A DNA stretch of 64,000 nucleotides from Trichosphaerium sp. ATCC 40318 (GCA_038496445.1 JALMLS010000423.1:124001-188000); one strand, 5' to 3'. Counted from the stretch's first letter, positions 57,152-64,000 are shown. Notes: a model not told the origin generated them from the letters alone. Made by a program: numbers and translations.

Positions 57152-60100
57152 TTACTGAGGACCTTCATAACGTCCTAGTTCTTTGAGCCTATTTACTCTT
57201 CTCAAGAACATTTCTTCAGGTATTATCTTTATACCCCATGAAGCTGCTTTGGTAAGCTTTGAGCTTCTACCACCAGTATCACCAACTATCAAATGGCTTA
57301 CATCTCGGGTTATTGAGTCCTTAACTTCTCCACCCAAATCCTTTACAATCTGATGTGCTAGCCCTAAACCAAGATATTAATTATACAACAAAAGAGAGAA
57401 TAGAAATACGATAATTTACTTTTTTAGAAAAGCGGTGTGGCCGTATGTGATTGTCAAAAAAGAAAAATTACGAGAAAAAGGAGAAATAGCTCAGGGAGGA
57501 GTTGAACCTCCGTCTACTCTTCATGAGAGAGTCGTGCTAGACCGTTACACCACAGAGCTTTGAGATGTTAACAATGCGCTATAGCGTCACGAGCGACCAA
57601 AAAGAAGACAATAGCGTGACAATGAGCGCAGTTCAAACCAAAAAAAAAAAAGGTTTCAATGAAAAGAATGTCAAGAATGTTTTTCCAAGTGCTTGTTTAA
57701 TTACCTCTAGTAAAACCGGCTAGTTTTCCAGTGAATACAATTAAATATCCTCGAAGTAAAGGTGGTGCTACTATATCACTTTGTACAGGCGCAGCCTAAA
57801 GTTAAAAATAAGTCAAAAAAAAATAGACGGTTTCTCAATGTTTTATCAAAACTGGGGACGTACACGTTCTAGTTGCATGCCAATAACTTTAAGACTATCA
57901 AAAAGTGCTATGTTCTTTTTATTTCTAAAGTAATCGTATATAGACAAAGCAACTTTTTCTCCAACACCTACCACAAAGACATTAACGTTCTGCAAAAAAG
58001 TGTTCTGGTTTTTTTCTGAAAAACAGTTTTTGCATCTCAACGACAAATTGTATCTAGTACGAGAAGAAGATATGTACCTTCGATTGATTTAAGAGATTTT
58101 AAAGAAGCGCTTCTGATCATCTCAATTGAAGAGAATCTATCACAAAGAAGACTTGCTATAAACAAAAGGTTAAAAAAACGTGAACATAAACAAAAATAGA
58201 CCAAAATCGTAATCGCTTTTTTTTTCCTTTCTCAATTATCAGAAGCATATTCTAGGTCGTACCTGTGCCTTTTCCTACGTGTCTTATACCTACACCAAAT
58301 AGAATTTGTTCATATGATGCATTCTTGATTCTATCATCAATAGAAGATAAAATAGCCTGAACTCTTCTTGCACCCCAACCTTCTCTCATTTCAAGGAACT
58401 CTTTGTGCTTCTTTAAGTTCAAAATATCAGGAAAATCTAAACAAGAGAAACATTAGTACTCACTAGGGAGCAATGTAATTGAACAAGGATTGCATCTTAA
58501 GAAGCAACAATACTAAAAAAAATATGCAGGCAAAAAATTTACCTTCAATCAGCCCGAAGCTAATAAGATCTGCAATCGTAGAATTACCCATACCAGCAAT
58601 GTCAAGACACTGCTTTGAGCAAAAGAAAGCAAGCTTTGGCTCAAGTTGTAATGGACAATCACGTAATGTACCTGGAGAATGTATAAATAAAGCACAAAGA
58701 ATCTTTAACATTGAAAAAAAGACCCAAAAAGCACTAAATTCGACACCGTACAATAGTGGTCAGCTTGATCTGGTGATGATTCAAGCCTGGATCCGACTTC
58801 ACAAGGGCAGTTTTTCCAGTCAAGTTTTGGCGGAGATATATTGGAAGGTTCCTCTAAACGAAGTAAGCACAAAAAACAACGTTTCAATCAAAATCAGAAA
58901 TGTGCTTCACACGAGTCTGAGTATTTTTAACTCGCGCTCTTGTTATAGAAGAAAATAAATTAGCTTACCCCTGCATTTTACAACATTTGGAATAACGTCT
59001 GCACTCTTTTCAATTGTTATCCAATCACCAACTCTGATTTTCTTGGATTTAATAAAATCACTGTTGAAAAGAGTTGCGCGAGCAATCTTGCTGCCTAATG
59101 TAATTTCATAAATAAAATCTAACTTCCAAAATACAATGTATAATACCTGCAAGATCCACAGGATCAAAATCAGCAACAGGTGTAATCTTACCAGTGCGTC
59201 CTACCTCAAGAAATATTCAACACAGGCGCGGCAAAAATGGTAAAAACGGTGCATACTGTAAGCTCGATATTACGTAGTATAGTTTCCTTCTGAGCTGCTT
59301 TGAATTTGTACGCTATTGCCCAACGTGGTGAGTGCGCTCTGGCACCTAACAAGACAACGTGAGCGTTGCAATCACAGCAAAATAATCAAAAAGGAAGCTC
59401 CCCCTCCGGGAATCGAACCCGGGTCTGTCGCGTGACAGGCGACGATGATAGCCACTACACCAAGGGGGATGCGTTGTTGCTGAAAAGAGCTCACTGCAGC
59501 AACCGATTCAGAAAAATTGATAGGTGTGCACACCTAAGCAAGCAGTGCAAACGTGATGTTTACGACAGAACCAAAAATGCATACCAAGTCGATTTTGTTG
59601 TTTGATATCATTAACTTTGAAAACAATGCCGTCTATTTCAAAATCAAAGCTGTTGCGCCTCTCTTCAAATTTGGTAGCAATAGAAGTTACTTGCTTCAGA
59701 TTAGCACATTCTACAGCCTCTTTATCAGCCGTTAATCCCAGTTTGCGTATTAAATCGAGACCTTCCACTTGTGTTGCTACAGAAAAATTGTTACATACAA
59801 CGATAATTCGCATGTCAGCTTATCATGATAAATTATACAATGGCAAACGTACTAATTGGTTGTCCTGACCAATTGTGAAGCGAATAGCCCATGAACAAAA
59901 GTGATTTGGCTGGTTGGGTATCTGAGGAACTATAATCATCTAGCGTACTTATAAGAAACTACGAAAACATTCGAATCCACAAGTGCTCAAAACTTTTAAA
60001 TAGAAACGCACGTGCCAAGGTGTATGCGTTTCATCATGCCGCTGGCCAAGTTGCGAGGGTTAGCGTATTGCTTATTTTCTGGTAACTCAGCGTTTATGCG

Positions 60101-61121
60101 CTCAAACTCCTTTTTAGGTAAAACAATTTCTCCTCTAATCTCCACTGAAACTGGTTTGCCGTCTACATAGTGTTAATCAGAAGTAACGTGCAACAACAAA
60201 AACAATGCAAAAGATATGGTCTCCCCCTCCGGGAATCGAACCCGGGTCTGTCGCGTGACAGGCGACGATGATAGCCACTACACCAAGGGGGATACATTGT
60301 GGGGGTTAATCCCAAATGTCAGGAACCGATTTGAAAAATTTTAATCAAAAGAACATAAGCTTATGTAATGTTGTTCATACCATACTCCAGCGTCTCTGGT
60401 AAATTACTAACATAACCTTGACAAGTTTTTGTTATATCTTCGCCTTCAGTGCCATCTCCTCGAGACGCAGCTTGATAAAACTGACCGTCTTTATACACAA
60501 TACTGCACGCGATACCATCAAACTTTAACTCTGCTACGTATTTGTACTTGTTCTTATAATCAAGTCAGTCATTGTTGAAACATTAGTGAGTACCCGTCCA
60601 AGCGCCTTTGCAATGCGTTCATCGAACTCTTTGAGTTCTTTTGCGTTGTAGGTGTTCGATAGTGACAACATCTTCTCACTGTGCTTTATTTTCTTTGCGC
60701 TCTCTCCAACAGCCAATCCGACGCTTGCTGTCGGCGATTCAGGTAATTTAAATTGGTATCTTTGATGGCGTTAAAATTTTTTGATAGAAGCTGAAAAACT
60801 ACGTGCTTGGTCTCCAGTTCTACTAGTTTCGCGTTTAACGTATCATACTCATAATCTGAAATCTCAGGGCGCGATTCGTTAAAATACAGATTTCTATGCC
60901 TATATTTCATTAGCGTACGTACGTACTTGGTGGTTTTGCAAAAACAAACGGTACCTGTTGAGTTCGTGCGTGAGGTCTGTTATTTCTTTGGCTACCTTGC
61001 TTGGTAGTGCGCGTTTTGCATAAAATCGCCGAGTTTTGCCAGGCTTGGTACATTGTTTGGTACTGCGTTGCGTCGTGCGCCAGTACGATCGTGCCACGTT
61101 AGCTCTAGAAAGCGCCAACAT
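57152..61121 (-). CDS. ligA: NAD+-dependent DNA ligase (bacterial LigA type), intron-rich, with Arg-rich N-terminal extension
   Basis: Domain Ia [73 protein letters not shown], Cys Zn finger, HhH and BRCT (VFTG...LGG...SSKLTKA). Confidence 0.95.
57487..57559 (-). tRNA. Atypical tRNA with CAT anticodon (Met), in the last ligA intron
   Basis: AGCTCTG-TG-GTGT-AACGGTCTA-GCAC-G-ACTCT-CTCATGA-AGAGT-AGAC-GGAGG-TTCAACT-CCTCC-CTGAGCT-A folds as a cloverleaf; T5 terminator downstream. Confidence 0.8.
59398..59469 (-). tRNA. tRNA-Asp(GTC), intronic
   Basis: TCCCCCT...GTCGC-CTGTCAC-GCGAC...CCGGGTTCGATTCCCGG-AGGGGGA-G; T5 terminator downstream. Confidence 0.95.
60221..60292 (-). tRNA. tRNA-Asp(GTC), intronic, identical second copy
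   Basis: 72-nt sequence identical to 59398-59469. Confidence 0.95.
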
Positions 61122-61206
61122 ACCACACCGCTTGGCAACAAACGACAATGCGTTTTAGTTTCCTTAAGTTAGAATTTCTATATCTTCGCCCTGTAAGGAG
61201 CATAGA

Positions 61207-64000
61207 ATGATACCTGCTGCATTGCGAGCAGTATCATTGGTTAGCTCGTTGTGGCAAGAAGAGGAGCATGTGTTAAAACATCAAGATGTTCTACAGGCTG
61301 CGTCTGTGGAAGAGATTGAGTATGCTACGTTACTAGGGCAAACAAAAGTACACCGTGTCTATTTTCAAGCATCGTTAACAGGCGTAGAGAGCTATGAATA
61401 AGGTCGAAAGCGTTTGCCGTATAGCTCAGAGCGACAAAGAAGTATTATTTGCTTGGATTGGTACGCTTTGTCTTTTAAGCAAACATGCTAATTTGACTAT
61501 TTACGCCCAGATACCTTGGAAGCATTTCACAGATCATTTTCTGCTTCTTTAGCAACGGTTTGTAAAAAAAACCGTATAGAAGACCAAATACATGACCTTT
61601 CAACTTTATTTACGTCTCATGTACGTTGTACACAGTAATTCTAATTATCCGCTCCCATAACAACCAATATATAAAAACCCTTAAACATGCGGTCTGCAGC
61701 GCGTTTTATTGACTTTAACGCAAGGAGTCGGATTTTAAAGTGTACGTAAAGTATGTAAGTAGCTACGACAAGAAAGTGGCCATGTGCGATCAATTAGAAG
61801 CGAATAATGATTTATTCGAGCAGTTTTTAATGGCACGTGAGAACAACCTATTTCCTTTTTTATTTTTTAGGCAGTTTTTCGGTTTTTTGGATCTTTTTTT
61901 ATGTTAGGTTGTACACATTTACTAACAGTTTTACGAAGGAGTTCTCTGAGCAATCAGGTGGTTTTAGTCTTCGAGATGCATTATTGAGGCCACTACAAAG
62001 ATTTGCAGAGTACATTGTGTTGTTGAAGGTAGACAACGAAAAAAACCGTGTTTGGATGTTTTTATTCTAATGTTGTTGTTTGTTTAGGACTTAACGAGTT
62101 GTGAAGATGTTTCAAAAGAACTTGCATCCAGTTTACAAGAGGTATGTGGTTAAATAAGTCAGTTAAAAAACATTAACGTTATTTTTTTTCAATTTTAAAA
62201 GGCATGCTCAATCTTCACTACTATATCCTATCACACGAATAATGAAATGGCTATAGTATCTGAATCTACTCTCACTATTGAGAGAAAAAGAATTTCAGCA
62301 CGACATGGTGTTGTCAAGGTATTTATTAACAGAAATGTCCAACCGTTTTTTGTAACTGTTTTTTTCTATGGCAGATATTTGATTCAAAAAAGAAAGTTAT
62401 GGTACCAGTCGATTTTTCAAATGTAATAGTAGCAGAAAAGATGGTGGGTTTATCTACAAAAATTGCAGGTAAGCTTGATGCTATAAAGGATCTTGAGGTT
62501 TTCACGGTCACATAAAAAATTGTTCACAAGTCGTTAATTTTTTTTAGATTTTTATGCTTGTCATGTCAGTGGTATCAAGTTTTTGATGAAACAATTTGAT
62601 TTGAAACCTGAATCTCTCGAATTTTGGAGAAAAGAAGTTGCTATTTTAAATAATCTACCACACCACGCTAATATAATTCGGTACAACAATCAAAATCTTT
62701 TTTATTTTTTTACCAGTGAAAACCGAAAGTTGTTTTTTGTTAGAAAACATTGTCACGTGAACTGTTCACACCAAACTTTTAAAAAACGTCCGTGAACACT
62801 TATAACAAAGGTGATAGAGCCTGTTTTTTTGTTTTATTTGAACGTACAGTGACACTTTGCTTGTATTTTTTAACCAAGCATTTGTAGTAATAGAGTAATT
62901 ACTCAGTTTTGTTGTAGATATGTCTATAGCTCCGAGAAAGGTCAGCAAGTTCGTATCTTCTTGGGTTACTATTCAACAACACTACGCGCCATTTTTGATG
63001 ATAGAAGGGTATGTTTGTAATGATCCTGGGGTGAAACGACATTATATGAACGAAATTCTATTTTTTTCGAATTAACTTTGTTTGTGCTAAATATTACCCT
63101 TGTAGCGGCGAAATGTTCCTTTTACACTTGATGAGATTATTATTTTACTCAAAAATATTCTACGTGGTCTACAATTTTTACATACCTATGATATAGTCTA
63201 CAGGAACCTAAGTATTGACAACGTACGTAGTATTTTTTGTTTTGTGGGTTTTTTTAATGTTTTTTGTATCTACTCGAAAAGTTGTGTATTTTGGTTTAAA
63301 TGTCCGCTGTCAACTGATTACACGCTTTTAGTTATTTGTTGAGAATAATTCTTTGGGTGCTATTGCGACTTGCGTGTTGGGTAATTTAGACTACGCTAAA
63401 CCAATTACAGCCAATATCAAGGCCAAAACCAATATTGGCAAGCCGTGTACGTAATATCGATCGTTGACGTTCAGAAAAAATTGTTCTGATCAAATTCTTA
63501 GCCTACTCTGCTCCAGAAGTACTTGGATCAAAAAACAGAGATAATTACTCATTTTATGCTGACAGTAAGTCCATCAACTTTTTTGCTTGTTAATAAACCA
63601 ACCGGACTGTGTTATTAACACAAGTACACCGAAGACTCGTCTCCTCTAACTTTTGTTAAGTTTGGTCTTTGGGAATGGTTATATACGCTCTAATTAGCTT
63701 AAAAATACCTTATGAATCAAGATCATACAATATACTACCAGAACTTGAAGCTGGACGAACACCACAGCTACCAAAAGGTAATTAACCATCAAGATGAGAC
63801 TTTTATACATAAGAGAACTAAAACATTGTTAGATTTGCCTAAAGAGAAAAAATTCTTGGCGGAACTCTATCGACAATGTACAAATTTTGTTCCTCAGGTA
63901 TGTCACCCTTGATGTTGGTTGCAATACCACATATGTCTGTTCATAACACATACTGATTTATTGAAGGAACGGCCGTCTATAGAAACGCTACAAAAGGCAT
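61207..64000 (+). CDS. RhoGEF (DH) plus kinase-like domain protein, truncated by the window end
   Basis: DH motif LRDALLRPLQRFAEYIVLLK; kinase-fold exons MKQF...EVAILNNLPHHANII, ILRGLQFLH..IVYRNLSIDN, YSAPEV, WSLGMVIY. Confidence 0.8.

What the first reader, a model, noticed from the sequence alone, without database searches (positions are those of the whole stretch)
57152..61121. Bacterial-type NAD+-dependent DNA ligase domesticated in a eukaryotic nucleus, possibly mitochondrial
Seen: complete LigA architecture (Ia, adenylation, OB, Zn finger, HhH, BRCT) split by about 17 spliceosomal introns, so it is not bacterial contamination. The N-terminus [37 protein letters not shown] is Arg/Ser/Thr-rich and lacks acidic residues. 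Established: eukaryotes normally use ATP-dependent ligases; NAD+ ligases are typical of bacteria and some large DNA viruses. Inference: a mitochondrion-targeted ligase of endosymbiotic, bacterial or viral origin.
Basis: partly seen in the sequence, partly recalled or inferred. Interest (0 to 1): 0.7.

Follow-up and report, generated by a model that had tools for sequence, protein, structure and literature searches.

The report
Amoeba nuclear gene for bacterial-type DNA ligase
This amoeba-type eukaryote has a real, spliced and transcribed nuclear gene for an intact bacterial-style (NAD-using) DNA ligase that probably works in mitochondria, but similar genes already sit in public data for other amoebae, so it is a new member of a known, little-studied group.

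Summary
On the minus strand, 61121-57152, 17 exons and 16 introns (14 GT-AG, 2 GC-AG) encode a 728-residue LigA that is collinear with bacterial LigA. It has the Ia, adenylation, OB, zinc-finger, HhH and BRCT parts, and every checked catalytic residue is kept.

Spliced cDNA contigs from two public runs confirm 9 introns and the 5' end. The other 7 introns rest on homology and canonical splice sites.

The protein is at most 39% identical to any bacterial, viral or metagenomic LigA retrieved. In trees it joins Planoprotostelium, Physarum and two unnamed eukaryote-like transcripts (bootstrap 100, SH-aLRT 98), with which it shares two insertions. This eukaryotic clade sits beside the "CPC zinc-finger" LigAs of Kapabacteria, Ignavibacteria and Chlorobi. 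An alphaproteobacterial origin is rejected (AU p = 2e-6). No viral affinity was seen, but no identified giant-virus LigA was in the trees.

All full-length eukaryotic members carry an acid-free, basic leader of 43-67 residues that the bacterial relatives lack. Three share an R-x-F/Y cleavage-like motif. Mitochondrial import is therefore plausible but untested.

Nuclear LigA genes were already published for Dictyostelium, Ostreococcus and Paulinella, the last with a predicted mitochondrial signal. I found no earlier LigA note in this scan for this genome. Verdict: a new member of a known kind, of moderate interest.

The parts
60955..61121 (-). Exon 1: start codon at 61119-61121, the roughly 40-residue N-terminal leader and the start of domain Ia
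   Evidence: The cDNA contig of run X2 reaches 61149, and its joint confirms the 3' boundary of the exon. The 5' UTR that the contig covers holds no upstream ATG.
61020..61121 (-). Putative mitochondrial presequence, residues 1-34, ending in RRFY|AK (an R-3-type cleavage-like motif)
   Evidence: There is no D or E before residue 46, and the net charge of the first 40 residues is +11. A similar motif occurs in Planoprotostelium and in P0202. Import is inferred, not tested.
60807..60899 (-). Exon 2: domain Ia (NMN-binding; YF...ISDYEYD)
   Evidence: Pfam Nlig-Ia hit; both introns confirmed by cDNA, the 3' one being GC-AG.
60594..60759 (-). Exon 3: start of the adenylation domain ([11 protein letters not shown])
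   Evidence: Pfam DNA_ligase_aden hit; boundaries confirmed by cDNA joints.
60381..60552 (-). Exon 4: motif I KxDG (catalytic Lys152, codon 60523-60525) and [12 protein letters not shown]
   Evidence: boundaries confirmed by cDNA joints.
60016..60162 (-). Exon 5: motif III (EIRGE) and NPRNLASG
   Evidence: cDNA joints confirm the boundaries; the downstream intron is GC-AG.
59853..59939 (-). Exon 6: the insertion specific to the eukaryotic clade, after PRNLxxGMM
   Evidence: Boundaries confirmed by cDNA joints; insertion shared with the amoebozoan LigAs.
59585..59776 (-). Exon 7: adenylation domain, motif IV (DGIVFKV)
   Evidence: The 5' boundary is confirmed by cDNA. The 3' boundary rests on homology and a GT donor.
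59257..59345 (-). Exon 8: motif V (PRWAIAYKF)
   Evidence: Homology and canonical splice sites only.
59147..59204 (-). Exon 9: start of the OB fold ([11 protein letters not shown])
   Evidence: Homology and canonical splice sites only.
58969..59094 (-). Exon 10: OB fold
   Evidence: Pfam DNA_ligase_OB hit; boundaries rest on homology.
58752..58853 (-). Exon 11: first half of the zinc finger (CPC...HY, plus the first base of the third Cys codon)
   Evidence: The boundary was corrected after comparison with P0043, giving a GTACGG donor. No transcript covers this exon.
58543..58671 (-). Exon 12: C-x4-C of the zinc finger and the first HhH
   Evidence: Acceptor preceded by a polypyrimidine tract; the exon is collinear with relatives.
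58263..58436 (-). Exon 13: HhH region ([11 protein letters not shown])
   Evidence: Homology and splice sites.
58078..58155 (-). Exon 14: HhH region
   Evidence: The 3' boundary is confirmed by the cDNA contig of run X1. The 5' boundary rests on homology.
57864..57967 (-). Exon 15: last HhH
   Evidence: Pfam HHH_2 hit; boundaries confirmed by cDNA joints in X1 and X2.
57705..57795 (-). Exon 16: linker and start of the BRCT domain
   Evidence: Boundaries confirmed by cDNA joints.
57152..57363 (-). Exon 17: BRCT domain and the stop codon (57152-57154)
   Evidence: Pfam BRCT hit at 6.7e-8; upstream boundary confirmed by a cDNA joint.
60221..60292 (-). tRNA-Asp(GTC) gene nested in intron 4 (218 nt), in the same orientation as the ligase gene
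   Evidence: Rfam 56.5 bits and ARAGORN. The intron is confirmed by cDNA.
59397..59469 (-). tRNA-Asp(GTC) gene nested in intron 7 (239 nt)
   Evidence: Its mature part is identical to the other tRNA-Asp, with different flanks.
57487..57559 (-). tRNA-Met(CAT) gene nested in intron 16 (341 nt)
   Evidence: Rfam 60.8 bits and ARAGORN. The intron is confirmed by cDNA.

Best explanation
This is an expressed nuclear gene of an amoeba-type eukaryote that encodes a full-length, catalytically competent NAD+-dependent DNA ligase (LigA). It belongs to a small eukaryotic LigA clade that also holds Planoprotostelium, Physarum and two unnamed eukaryote-like transcripts. That clade descends from a LigA of the Bacteroidota/Ignavibacteria/Chlorobi (FCB) group of bacteria, taken up by an ancestor of these amoebae and later filled with spliceosomal introns. 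The inferred mechanism is as follows. The precursor is made in the cytosol. Its acid-free, Arg/Lys/Ser/Thr-rich leader of about 34-40 residues directs it into mitochondria and is cut off near RRFY|AK. The mature enzyme then uses matrix NAD+ to adenylate Lys152 and seals nicks in mitochondrial DNA during replication and repair. Gene structure, transcription, conserved catalytic residues and phylogenetic position are shown here. Import into mitochondria, cleavage of the leader and enzyme activity are inferred.
For: Gene and transcript:
- 17 exons form one open 728-codon frame with canonical splice sites.
- Nine introns and the 5' end appear in spliced cDNA contigs from two runs in two studies.

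Activity:
- The protein is collinear with bacterial LigA over its whole length.
- The residues I recalled as essential in E. coli LigA are kept or conservatively replaced: Y22, D32, Y35, D36, K115, D117, G118, R136, E173, R200, D285, K290, K314, R333, T334, three of the four zinc cysteines in register with the fourth shifted by one position, and the HhH glycines.

Clade:
- The careful maximum-likelihood tree gives this protein plus four eukaryotic LigAs bootstrap 100 and SH-aLRT 98.
- The same tree gives that clade plus the FCB 'CPC' LigAs and P0258 95/89. The result holds with alphaproteobacteria added and with very long viral branches added.
- With the other eukaryotes removed, this protein still attaches next to the FCB group.
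- Two insertions are shared only with the eukaryotic members. 'CPC' and 'GWG' are shared with the FCB group.

Origin:
- Eukaryotes plus alphaproteobacteria as one clade is rejected (lnL difference 172, AU p = 1.8e-6).

Targeting:
- The first acidic residue is at position 46 here, and at 44, 53 and 68 in the three full-length eukaryotic relatives. In both FCB bacterial LigAs checked it is at position 3.
- The net charge of the first 40 residues is +11.
- RRFY-AK here aligns with RRFS-SAK in Planoprotostelium and RSF-AS in P0202.
- In Paulinella, one nuclear LigA copy has a published predicted mitochondrial signal (PMC9450145).
Against: - No targeting predictor, localisation data or enzyme assay was available. 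A basic N-terminus could also be a nuclear localisation signal.
- The related transcript P0043/L138 and Physarum carry long K/E-rich low-complexity stretches that look nuclear rather than mitochondrial.
- Earlier scan notes report other candidate mitochondrial ligases in this genome, namely LigE fusions. These notes are unchecked.
- Yutin and Koonin report a Lig III orthologue in Dictyostelium. LigA therefore need not be the only, or even the, mitochondrial ligase.
- This protein is a long branch (2.35 changes per site). Its tree position could be affected by long-branch attraction, although the shared insertions argue independently for the clade.
- Seven introns, including those around the zinc finger, lack transcript support.
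- No Rickettsiales or identified giant-virus LigA was in the trees.
Confidence: 0.6

Rival explanations
1. The same real, active LigA works in the nucleus or cytosol as an extra repair ligase. This would resemble the horizontally acquired LigE of bdelloid rotifers. On this reading the basic N-terminus is a nuclear localisation signal, not a mitochondrial presequence.
For: [12 protein letters not shown] is a basic cluster that could serve as a nuclear localisation signal. The relatives P0043/L138 and Physarum have K/E-rich low-complexity regions typical of nuclear proteins. A horizontally acquired ligase serving nuclear repair has a precedent (PMC10665377). Other candidate mitochondrial ligases are noted in this genome (unchecked).
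Against: The leader has no acidic residue for 45 positions, is rich in Ser/Thr/Arg, and ends in an R-3-type motif that is conserved in two relatives. This pattern is typical of mitochondrial presequences. Physarum and P0202 begin with hydrophobic, basic N-termini ahead of any charged linker. Paulinella has a published predicted mitochondrial LigA.
Confidence: 0.2
2. The ligase is sent to another DNA-containing compartment, such as a plastid-like organelle or an endosymbiont, or is dually targeted. Paulinella's chromatophore-targeted LigA copy is the model.
For: Paulinella has separate nuclear LigA copies with chromatophore and mitochondrial signals (PMC9450145).
Against: Nothing seen here or in the earlier notes points to a plastid or chromatophore in this organism. 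The leader has no signal-peptide-like hydrophobic core. I found only one LigA gene noted in this genome.
Confidence: 0.05
3. The gene descends from the alphaproteobacterial ancestor of mitochondria or from a giant virus, as the first reader suggested as alternatives.
For: Giant viruses of amoebae carry LigA, and amoebae are known sites of gene exchange (PMC2806865). In that paper's figure legend Ostreococcus LigA is listed next to Rickettsia.
Against: Four alphaproteobacterial LigAs group with E. coli, far from the eukaryotic clade, and forcing them together is rejected (AU p = 1.8e-6). None of 80 IMG/VR LigA loci is closer than about 33% over the full length. LigAs from viral contigs of 200-500 kb do not join the eukaryotic clade. 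The 'CPC' and 'GWG' signatures point to FCB bacteria.
Confidence: 0.07
4. The locus is bacterial contamination or a decaying pseudogene.
For: None beyond the bacterial-type domain architecture.
Against: There are sixteen spliceosomal introns, nine seen spliced out in cDNA. CDS GC (41%) lies within the range of the window's 2-kb bins (33-42%). The reading frame is intact and all checked catalytic residues are kept. Eukaryotic tRNA genes lie in the introns.
Confidence: 0.01

Closest known systems
Bacterial LigA (for example E. coli LigA, PDB 2OWO; S. aureus 3JSL)
   Same: The domain order is the same: Ia, adenylation, OB, zinc finger, HhH, BRCT. All checked catalytic residues are kept, and the alignment is collinear over about 680 residues.
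   Different: This gene is nuclear, has 16 introns and adds a leader of about 40 residues. Identity is only 33-39%. The zinc finger starts C-P-C instead of C-x-x-C. There are two small insertions.
LigAs of FCB-group bacteria with the 'CPC' zinc-finger variant (Kapabacteria, Ignavibacteria, Chlorobi; P0203, P0212, P0263)
   Same: They share the CPC zinc-finger start, the GWG/RWG motif in the HhH region, and PRNL instead of PRNA. In the trees they are the sister group of the eukaryotic clade. Their precomputed Pfam domain lists also lack the ZBD family.
   Different: They are bacterial, have no introns and no N-terminal leader. They lack the two insertions specific to the eukaryotes.
Nuclear LigA genes of Amoebozoa: Planoprotostelium fungivorum 'DNA ligase, NAD-dependent' (P0220), the Physarum polycephalum EukProt transcript (P0278), and Dictyostelium discoideum LigA in the tree of Yutin and Koonin 2009
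   Same: Same clade (100/98), same two insertions, and an acid-free N-terminal leader.
   Different: Only about 33% identical to this protein, which is the longest branch of the clade. Physarum and P0043 carry long low-complexity inserts that are absent here. Dictyostelium LigA could not be fetched, so its membership of this clade is untested.
Paulinella micropora nuclear LigA (K01972) copies with predicted mitochondrial or chromatophore signals (PMC9450145)
   Same: Nuclear-encoded LigA in an amoeba, with one copy carrying a predicted mitochondrial signal. The authors judged them to be of eukaryotic origin.
   Different: Paulinella is a rhizarian with three copies, one of them sent to the chromatophore.
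LigA of giant viruses (mimivirus, entomopoxviruses, iridoviruses; PMC2806865)
   Same: NAD+-dependent ligases that work inside eukaryotic cells, some of them in amoebae.
   Different: That paper places them with gammaproteobacterial and phage LigAs. No viral LigA retrieved here groups with this gene. From memory, not checked here: the mimivirus and entomopoxvirus enzymes lack the zinc finger.
ATP-dependent mitochondrial ligases (LIG3 in animals; LIG1 isoforms in yeast, plants and red algae)
   Same: They have the same proposed job, sealing mitochondrial DNA nicks, and they reach the organelle through an N-terminal presequence (PMC4166229).
   Different: They belong to a different branch of the nucleotidyltransferase superfamily and use ATP instead of NAD+.
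Bdelloid rotifer LigE acquired by horizontal transfer (PMC10665377)
   Same: A bacterial-type DNA ligase that a eukaryotic nucleus has taken up, that has gained introns and that is expressed.
   Different: It is an ATP-dependent LigE that acts in nuclear repair, and it is a different family.

Membership tests
NAD+-dependent DNA ligase (LigA) | N-terminal Ia domain with NMN-binding residues (E. coli Y22, D32, Y35, D36) | tested here: met
   Pfam Nlig-Ia hit, below its cut-off because only one exon was scanned. Y61, D71, Y74 and D75 align with the E. coli residues. H23 is F, as in one bacterial LigA in the alignment. The list of residues comes from my memory of the E. coli mutational literature.
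NAD+-dependent DNA ligase (LigA) | Adenylation domain with motif I KxDG and motifs III, IV and V | tested here: met
   PF01653 hits on four exons, with E-values down to 3e-14. K152, D154, G155, E211, D326, K331 and K355 are conserved.
NAD+-dependent DNA ligase (LigA) | LigA-type OB-fold domain | tested here: met
   PF03120 at E = 1.5e-12, above its cut-off. R374 and T375 are conserved.
NAD+-dependent DNA ligase (LigA) | Four-cysteine zinc finger | tested here: inconclusive
   Four cysteines are present as C448-P-C450...C467-x4-C472 after the splice correction. The first pair is C-x-C rather than C-x-x-C. PF03119 is absent from the precomputed Pfam domains of the eukaryotic relatives and of the most similar FCB LigAs. 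These exons have no transcript cover, and zinc binding is untested.
NAD+-dependent DNA ligase (LigA) | Helix-hairpin-helix DNA-binding domain | tested here: met
   PF12826 gave a weak hit on a single exon. The HhH glycines G455, G489, G521 and G553 (E. coli numbering) are conserved. The region is collinear with relatives.
NAD+-dependent DNA ligase (LigA) | C-terminal BRCT domain | tested here: met
   PF00533 at E = 6.7e-8, 33 bits against a cut-off of 21.3.
NAD+-dependent DNA ligase (LigA) | NAD+-dependent self-adenylation and nick sealing | not testable with these tools
   This needs the recombinant enzyme.
Eukaryotic (amoebozoan-type) nuclear LigA clade | Groups with Planoprotostelium and Physarum LigA and shares their insertions | tested here: met
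   Bootstrap 100 and SH-aLRT 98, and 95-98 in the quick trees. There is a one-residue insertion before the conserved LP motif and an insertion after PRNLxxGMM.
Mitochondrial matrix precursor protein | N-terminal extension relative to bacterial homologues that is acid-free and rich in Arg, Lys, Ser and Thr | tested here: met
   The extension is about 40 residues. The first D or E is at position 46, and the net charge of the first 40 residues is +11. The three full-length eukaryotic relatives show the same pattern, and the bacterial relatives do not.
Mitochondrial matrix precursor protein | Amphipathic helix and a processing-peptidase cleavage motif | tested here: inconclusive
   The Eisenberg hydrophobic moment is 0.63-0.75 for residues 9-26. 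RRFY|AK fits the R-3 rule as I remember it and aligns with RRFS|S and RSF|AS in relatives. No dedicated predictor was available.
Mitochondrial matrix precursor protein | Localisation in mitochondria | not testable with these tools
   This needs a GFP fusion, immunolocalisation or organelle proteomics.
Gene of mitochondrial-endosymbiont (alphaproteobacterial) descent | Branches with alphaproteobacterial LigA | tested here: not met
   Tistrella, Sphingomonas, Pseudorhodobacter and Sinorhizobium LigAs group with E. coli. Forcing them to join the eukaryotes costs 172 lnL units (AU p = 1.8e-6). Rickettsiales were not sampled.
Giant-virus (NCLDV) LigA clade | Branches with viral LigA | tested here: inconclusive
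   No IMG/VR LigA groups with this gene, including those from contigs of 200-500 kb. None of those contigs was shown to be a giant virus, and no reference mimivirus, poxvirus or iridovirus LigA could be fetched.

The most novel reading that the evidence does not exclude
Amoebozoan-type amoebae replaced or supplemented the usual ATP-dependent mitochondrial DNA ligase with an NAD+-dependent LigA captured from an FCB-group bacterium. As far as I could find, this would be the first NAD+-dependent DNA ligase shown to maintain the genome of a eukaryotic organelle. It would tie mitochondrial DNA sealing to the matrix NAD+ pool and offer a lineage-specific drug target in amoebae.
Probability: 0.45. 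Interest if true: 0.55.

Novelty: new member of a known kind. Interest (0 to 1): 0.4.

Why it matters
Textbooks say eukaryotic cells use only ATP-dependent DNA ligases. A conserved, intron-bearing, presequence-carrying LigA clade in amoebae is a clear exception. It has been listed in trees and annotation tables, but in the papers I could search it has never been characterised. If it is the mitochondrial ligase, three things follow:
- It adds another bacterial, non-alphaproteobacterial piece to the mosaic mitochondrial replication machinery.
- It links mitochondrial DNA repair to NAD+ supply.
- Because LigA inhibitors already exist as antibacterial leads, it could be a selective target in pathogenic amoebae, if they carry the gene. 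That was not checked here.

For genome annotation, the locus also gives a well-supported 17-exon model, a share of GC-AG introns, and tRNA genes nested in introns.

Tried and rejected
1. My first splice model for exons 11/12 used a 44-nt intron and gave a 740-residue protein. It put 12 hydrophobic residues inside the zinc finger. Comparison with P0043 showed that a GTACGG donor 5 nt upstream, paired with the polypyrimidine/CAG acceptor, restores C-x4-C. The old model was dropped.

2. The full-library search with one 63-residue exon found only 58 hits, none above 49% identity. The ones I looked up lie on bacterial or fragmentary contigs. By itself this gave no eukaryotic relative apart from P0043, which I recognised only later.

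3. An alignment of one backbone protein plus all exon fragments was misaligned and was not used. A profile of eight bacterial LigAs plus the exons returned only consensus-like bacterial LigAs.

4. The first tree, built without eukaryotic LigAs, put this protein with two other long branches and no support. I treat that as long-branch attraction.

The single-exon scan gave 27 loci, the best being a high-GC MAG at 39% full-length identity. The metagenome scan gave nothing closer.

6. The ESM Atlas look-up of one exon returned only generic bacterial LigA clusters.

7. Exact look-ups of two long ORFs from the window, meant to identify the assembly, found nothing.

8. Literature searches for a characterised mitochondrial or eukaryotic LigA found no dedicated study.

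9. The spliced protein has no reference id. It therefore could not be sent to the structure, Pfam, PDB or large homology tools as a whole. Those steps were done exon by exon, or inside scripts only.


Full report
**What is in the sequence**

The window is AT-rich; 2-kb bins range from 33 to 42% GC. Between 61121 and 57152 on the minus strand, short open stretches in changing frames match every LigA domain. Single exons hit Pfam Nlig-Ia, DNA_ligase_aden (four exons, E down to 3e-14), DNA_ligase_OB (1.5e-12), HHH_2 and BRCT (6.7e-8). One exon matches solved LigA adenylation domains at 6e-10.

**Transcript evidence**

Two public runs from two studies hold spliced contigs of this gene. Run X2 carries the SMART cDNA adapter as loose ends, which I recognise from my own knowledge, so it is cDNA.

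The contigs confirm nine introns. In plus-strand coordinates they are:
- 57364-57704
- 57796-57863
- 57968-58077
- 59777-59852
- 59940-60015
- 60163-60380
- 60553-60593
- 60760-60806
- 60900-60954

Two of them are GC-AG. The transcript reaches at least 61149. That stretch of 5' UTR holds no ATG upstream of the start at 61121. This rules out bacterial contamination. No contig covers 58144-59599.

**Gene model**

I modelled the uncovered middle part from tblastn against a phage LigA, the raw sequence and canonical splice sites.

My first model placed a 12-residue hydrophobic insertion inside the zinc finger. Alignment with a related eukaryote-like protein, P0043, showed the better solution. A GTACGG donor five bases upstream, joined to the acceptor behind a clear polypyrimidine tract, gives C-x4-C.

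The final model has 17 exons and 16 introns of 41-341 nt (14 GT-AG, 2 GC-AG). It codes for 728 residues without a stop, and it aligns with bacterial and eukaryotic LigAs without gaps at any exon junction. Seven introns rest on homology alone.

**Is the enzyme intact?**

In an alignment with E. coli LigA and nine other LigAs, the residues I recall as essential in E. coli are kept or conservatively replaced:
- Ia domain: Y22, D32, Y35, D36
- Motif I: K115, D117, G118
- Other adenylation-domain residues: R136, E173, R200, D285, K290, K314
- OB fold: R333, T334
- The HhH glycines

H23 is F, as in one bacterial sequence in the alignment.

The zinc finger has four cysteines, but it starts C-P-C instead of C-x-x-C. 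This variant is shared with Physarum, P0202, P0043 and FCB-group bacteria. The precomputed Pfam domains of the eukaryotic relatives and of the most similar FCB LigAs lack the ZBD family.

I therefore treat the protein as a bona fide, probably active LigA. Activity itself is not testable here.

**Relatives**

A full-library search with the 63-residue exon 7 found only 58 hits, none above 49% identity. Those I looked up are on bacterial or fragmentary contigs.

Scans of IMG/VR, of one genome per bacterial species and of JGI metagenomes gave nothing above 39% identity over the full length.

One hit, P0043, shares the CPC and GWG motifs. It lies on a 3.2-kb JGI contig with low-complexity inserts typical of eukaryotes. 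Searching with it found:
- 'DNA ligase, NAD-dependent [Planoprotostelium fungivorum]' (P0220)
- a Physarum polycephalum EukProt transcript (P0278)
- a Logan transcript (P0202)

The next-best hits were LigAs of Kapabacteria, Ignavibacteria, Chlorobi and Bacteroidota. A profile of the eukaryotic sequences found no further eukaryotes in that collection.

**Phylogeny**

Without eukaryotic LigAs, the protein is an unplaced long branch. With them, the careful maximum-likelihood tree (LG+C20 PMSF) gives two results:
- This protein plus the four eukaryotic LigAs: ultrafast bootstrap 100, SH-aLRT 98.
- That clade plus the FCB 'CPC' LigAs and P0258: 95/89.

The result survives three changes to the data set:
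- Removing the other eukaryotes: the protein still attaches next to the FCB group, though without support.
- Adding four alphaproteobacterial LigAs: they group with E. coli.
- Adding very long-branched LigAs from viral contigs of 200-500 kb.

Forcing eukaryotes and alphaproteobacteria into one clade costs 172 lnL units (AU p = 1.8e-6).

Two insertions are independent of the tree and are shared only by this protein and the eukaryotic LigAs. One is a single residue before the conserved LP motif of the adenylation domain. The other follows PRNLxxGMM.

The best reading is a single capture of an FCB-type bacterial LigA by an ancestor of these amoebae, followed by intron gain and fast divergence.

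Some caveats remain. This protein has the longest branch in the clade (2.35). Rickettsiales and reference giant-virus LigAs were not available. Dictyostelium, Ostreococcus and Paulinella sequences could not be fetched.

**Targeting**

Relative to bacterial LigA, the protein has about 40 extra N-terminal residues. They contain 13 Lys/Arg and 9 Ser/Thr, and no acidic residue before position 46. The net charge of the first 40 residues is +11, and the segment has a moderate hydrophobic moment.

The three full-length eukaryotic relatives also start with acid-free leaders, with the first D or E at 44, 53 and 68. Both FCB LigAs checked have an acidic residue at position 3.

The end of the leader, RRFY-AK, aligns with RRFS-SAK in Planoprotostelium and RSF-AS in P0202. 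This fits the R-3 processing rule as I remember it.

The next Met lies at about residue 116, past the Ia domain. A shorter isoform that still used NAD+ is therefore unlikely.

This is good circumstantial support for mitochondrial import, but it is not a test. A nuclear role remains possible. Earlier notes of this scan describe LigE-fusion genes in the same genome as candidate mitochondrial ligases (not checked by me).

**What was already known**

- Yutin and Koonin (2009, PMC2806865) included Dictyostelium discoideum and Ostreococcus LigA as eukaryotic sequences in their LigA tree, and they report Lig III in Dictyostelium.
- A 2022 paper on Paulinella (PMC9450145) lists three nuclear LigA genes, one with a predicted mitochondrial signal and one with a chromatophore signal. 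The authors judged them to be of eukaryotic origin.
- Planoprotostelium's protein is annotated as an NAD-dependent DNA ligase in NCBI.
- I found no paper that characterises any eukaryotic cellular LigA.
- The scan index held no earlier LigA note for this genome.

**Verdict**

The gene is a new member of a known but unstudied kind. Three things are added here:
- a transcript-backed gene model
- the link to an amoebozoan-type clade with conserved leaders
- an FCB-group origin, rather than an endosymbiotic or viral one

Noticed in passing
window 57487-57559, 59397-59469, 60221-60292 (all minus strand): The only three tRNA genes in the 64-kb window lie inside the three longest introns of the ligase gene, in the same orientation as it. 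They are tRNA-Met(CAT) and two copies of tRNA-Asp(GTC). The two Asp copies are identical in the mature part but have different flanks. Each gene is followed by a T-rich stretch.
   Followed up: partly
window 57487-57559: The tRNA-Met has an A1:U72 end pair, which I recall as an initiator feature, but an ordinary T-loop. I did not work out whether it is an initiator or an elongator.
   Followed up: no
window 61149-61207: The 5' end of the ligase transcript (at least 61149) and a contig of run X3 that begins at 61198, next to a plus-strand ORF with its ATG at 61207, are about 50 bases apart. This suggests a very compact two-way promoter.
   Followed up: no
window 59940-60015 and 60760-60806: Two of the 16 introns are GC-AG, and both have the same donor, GCACGT. 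Both are confirmed by cDNA. Most other donors read GTAYG. This may be a feature of this genome's splice sites.
   Followed up: no
window 59444-59489: One X2 cDNA contig starts inside the intronic tRNA-Asp with the SMART adapter and runs on into unrelated sequence. It could be a chimera or a captured tRNA or intron RNA.
   Followed up: no
L138 1-3247 (JGI contig Ga0506604_004141): This is a eukaryote-like LigA with K/E/Q-rich and N-rich inserts. Its reading frame breaks at about 624-640. About 28 residues are missing there, including the conserved H-x-x-P-M-L-S-L motif. It may be an exon-skipped or defective transcript.
   Followed up: partly
P0005 (KAF5295782.1, Lamprigera yunnana): A firefly assembly holds a 501-residue 'hypothetical protein' that is a truncated LigA. 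It could be bacterial contamination, symbiont DNA or a gene transfer.
   Followed up: no
L006 (ENA contig ctg18086l): A 761-residue LigA (P0035) lies two genes away from an Hc1 (chlamydial histone-like) gene. In the trees it groups with Bacteroidota LigAs.
   Followed up: no
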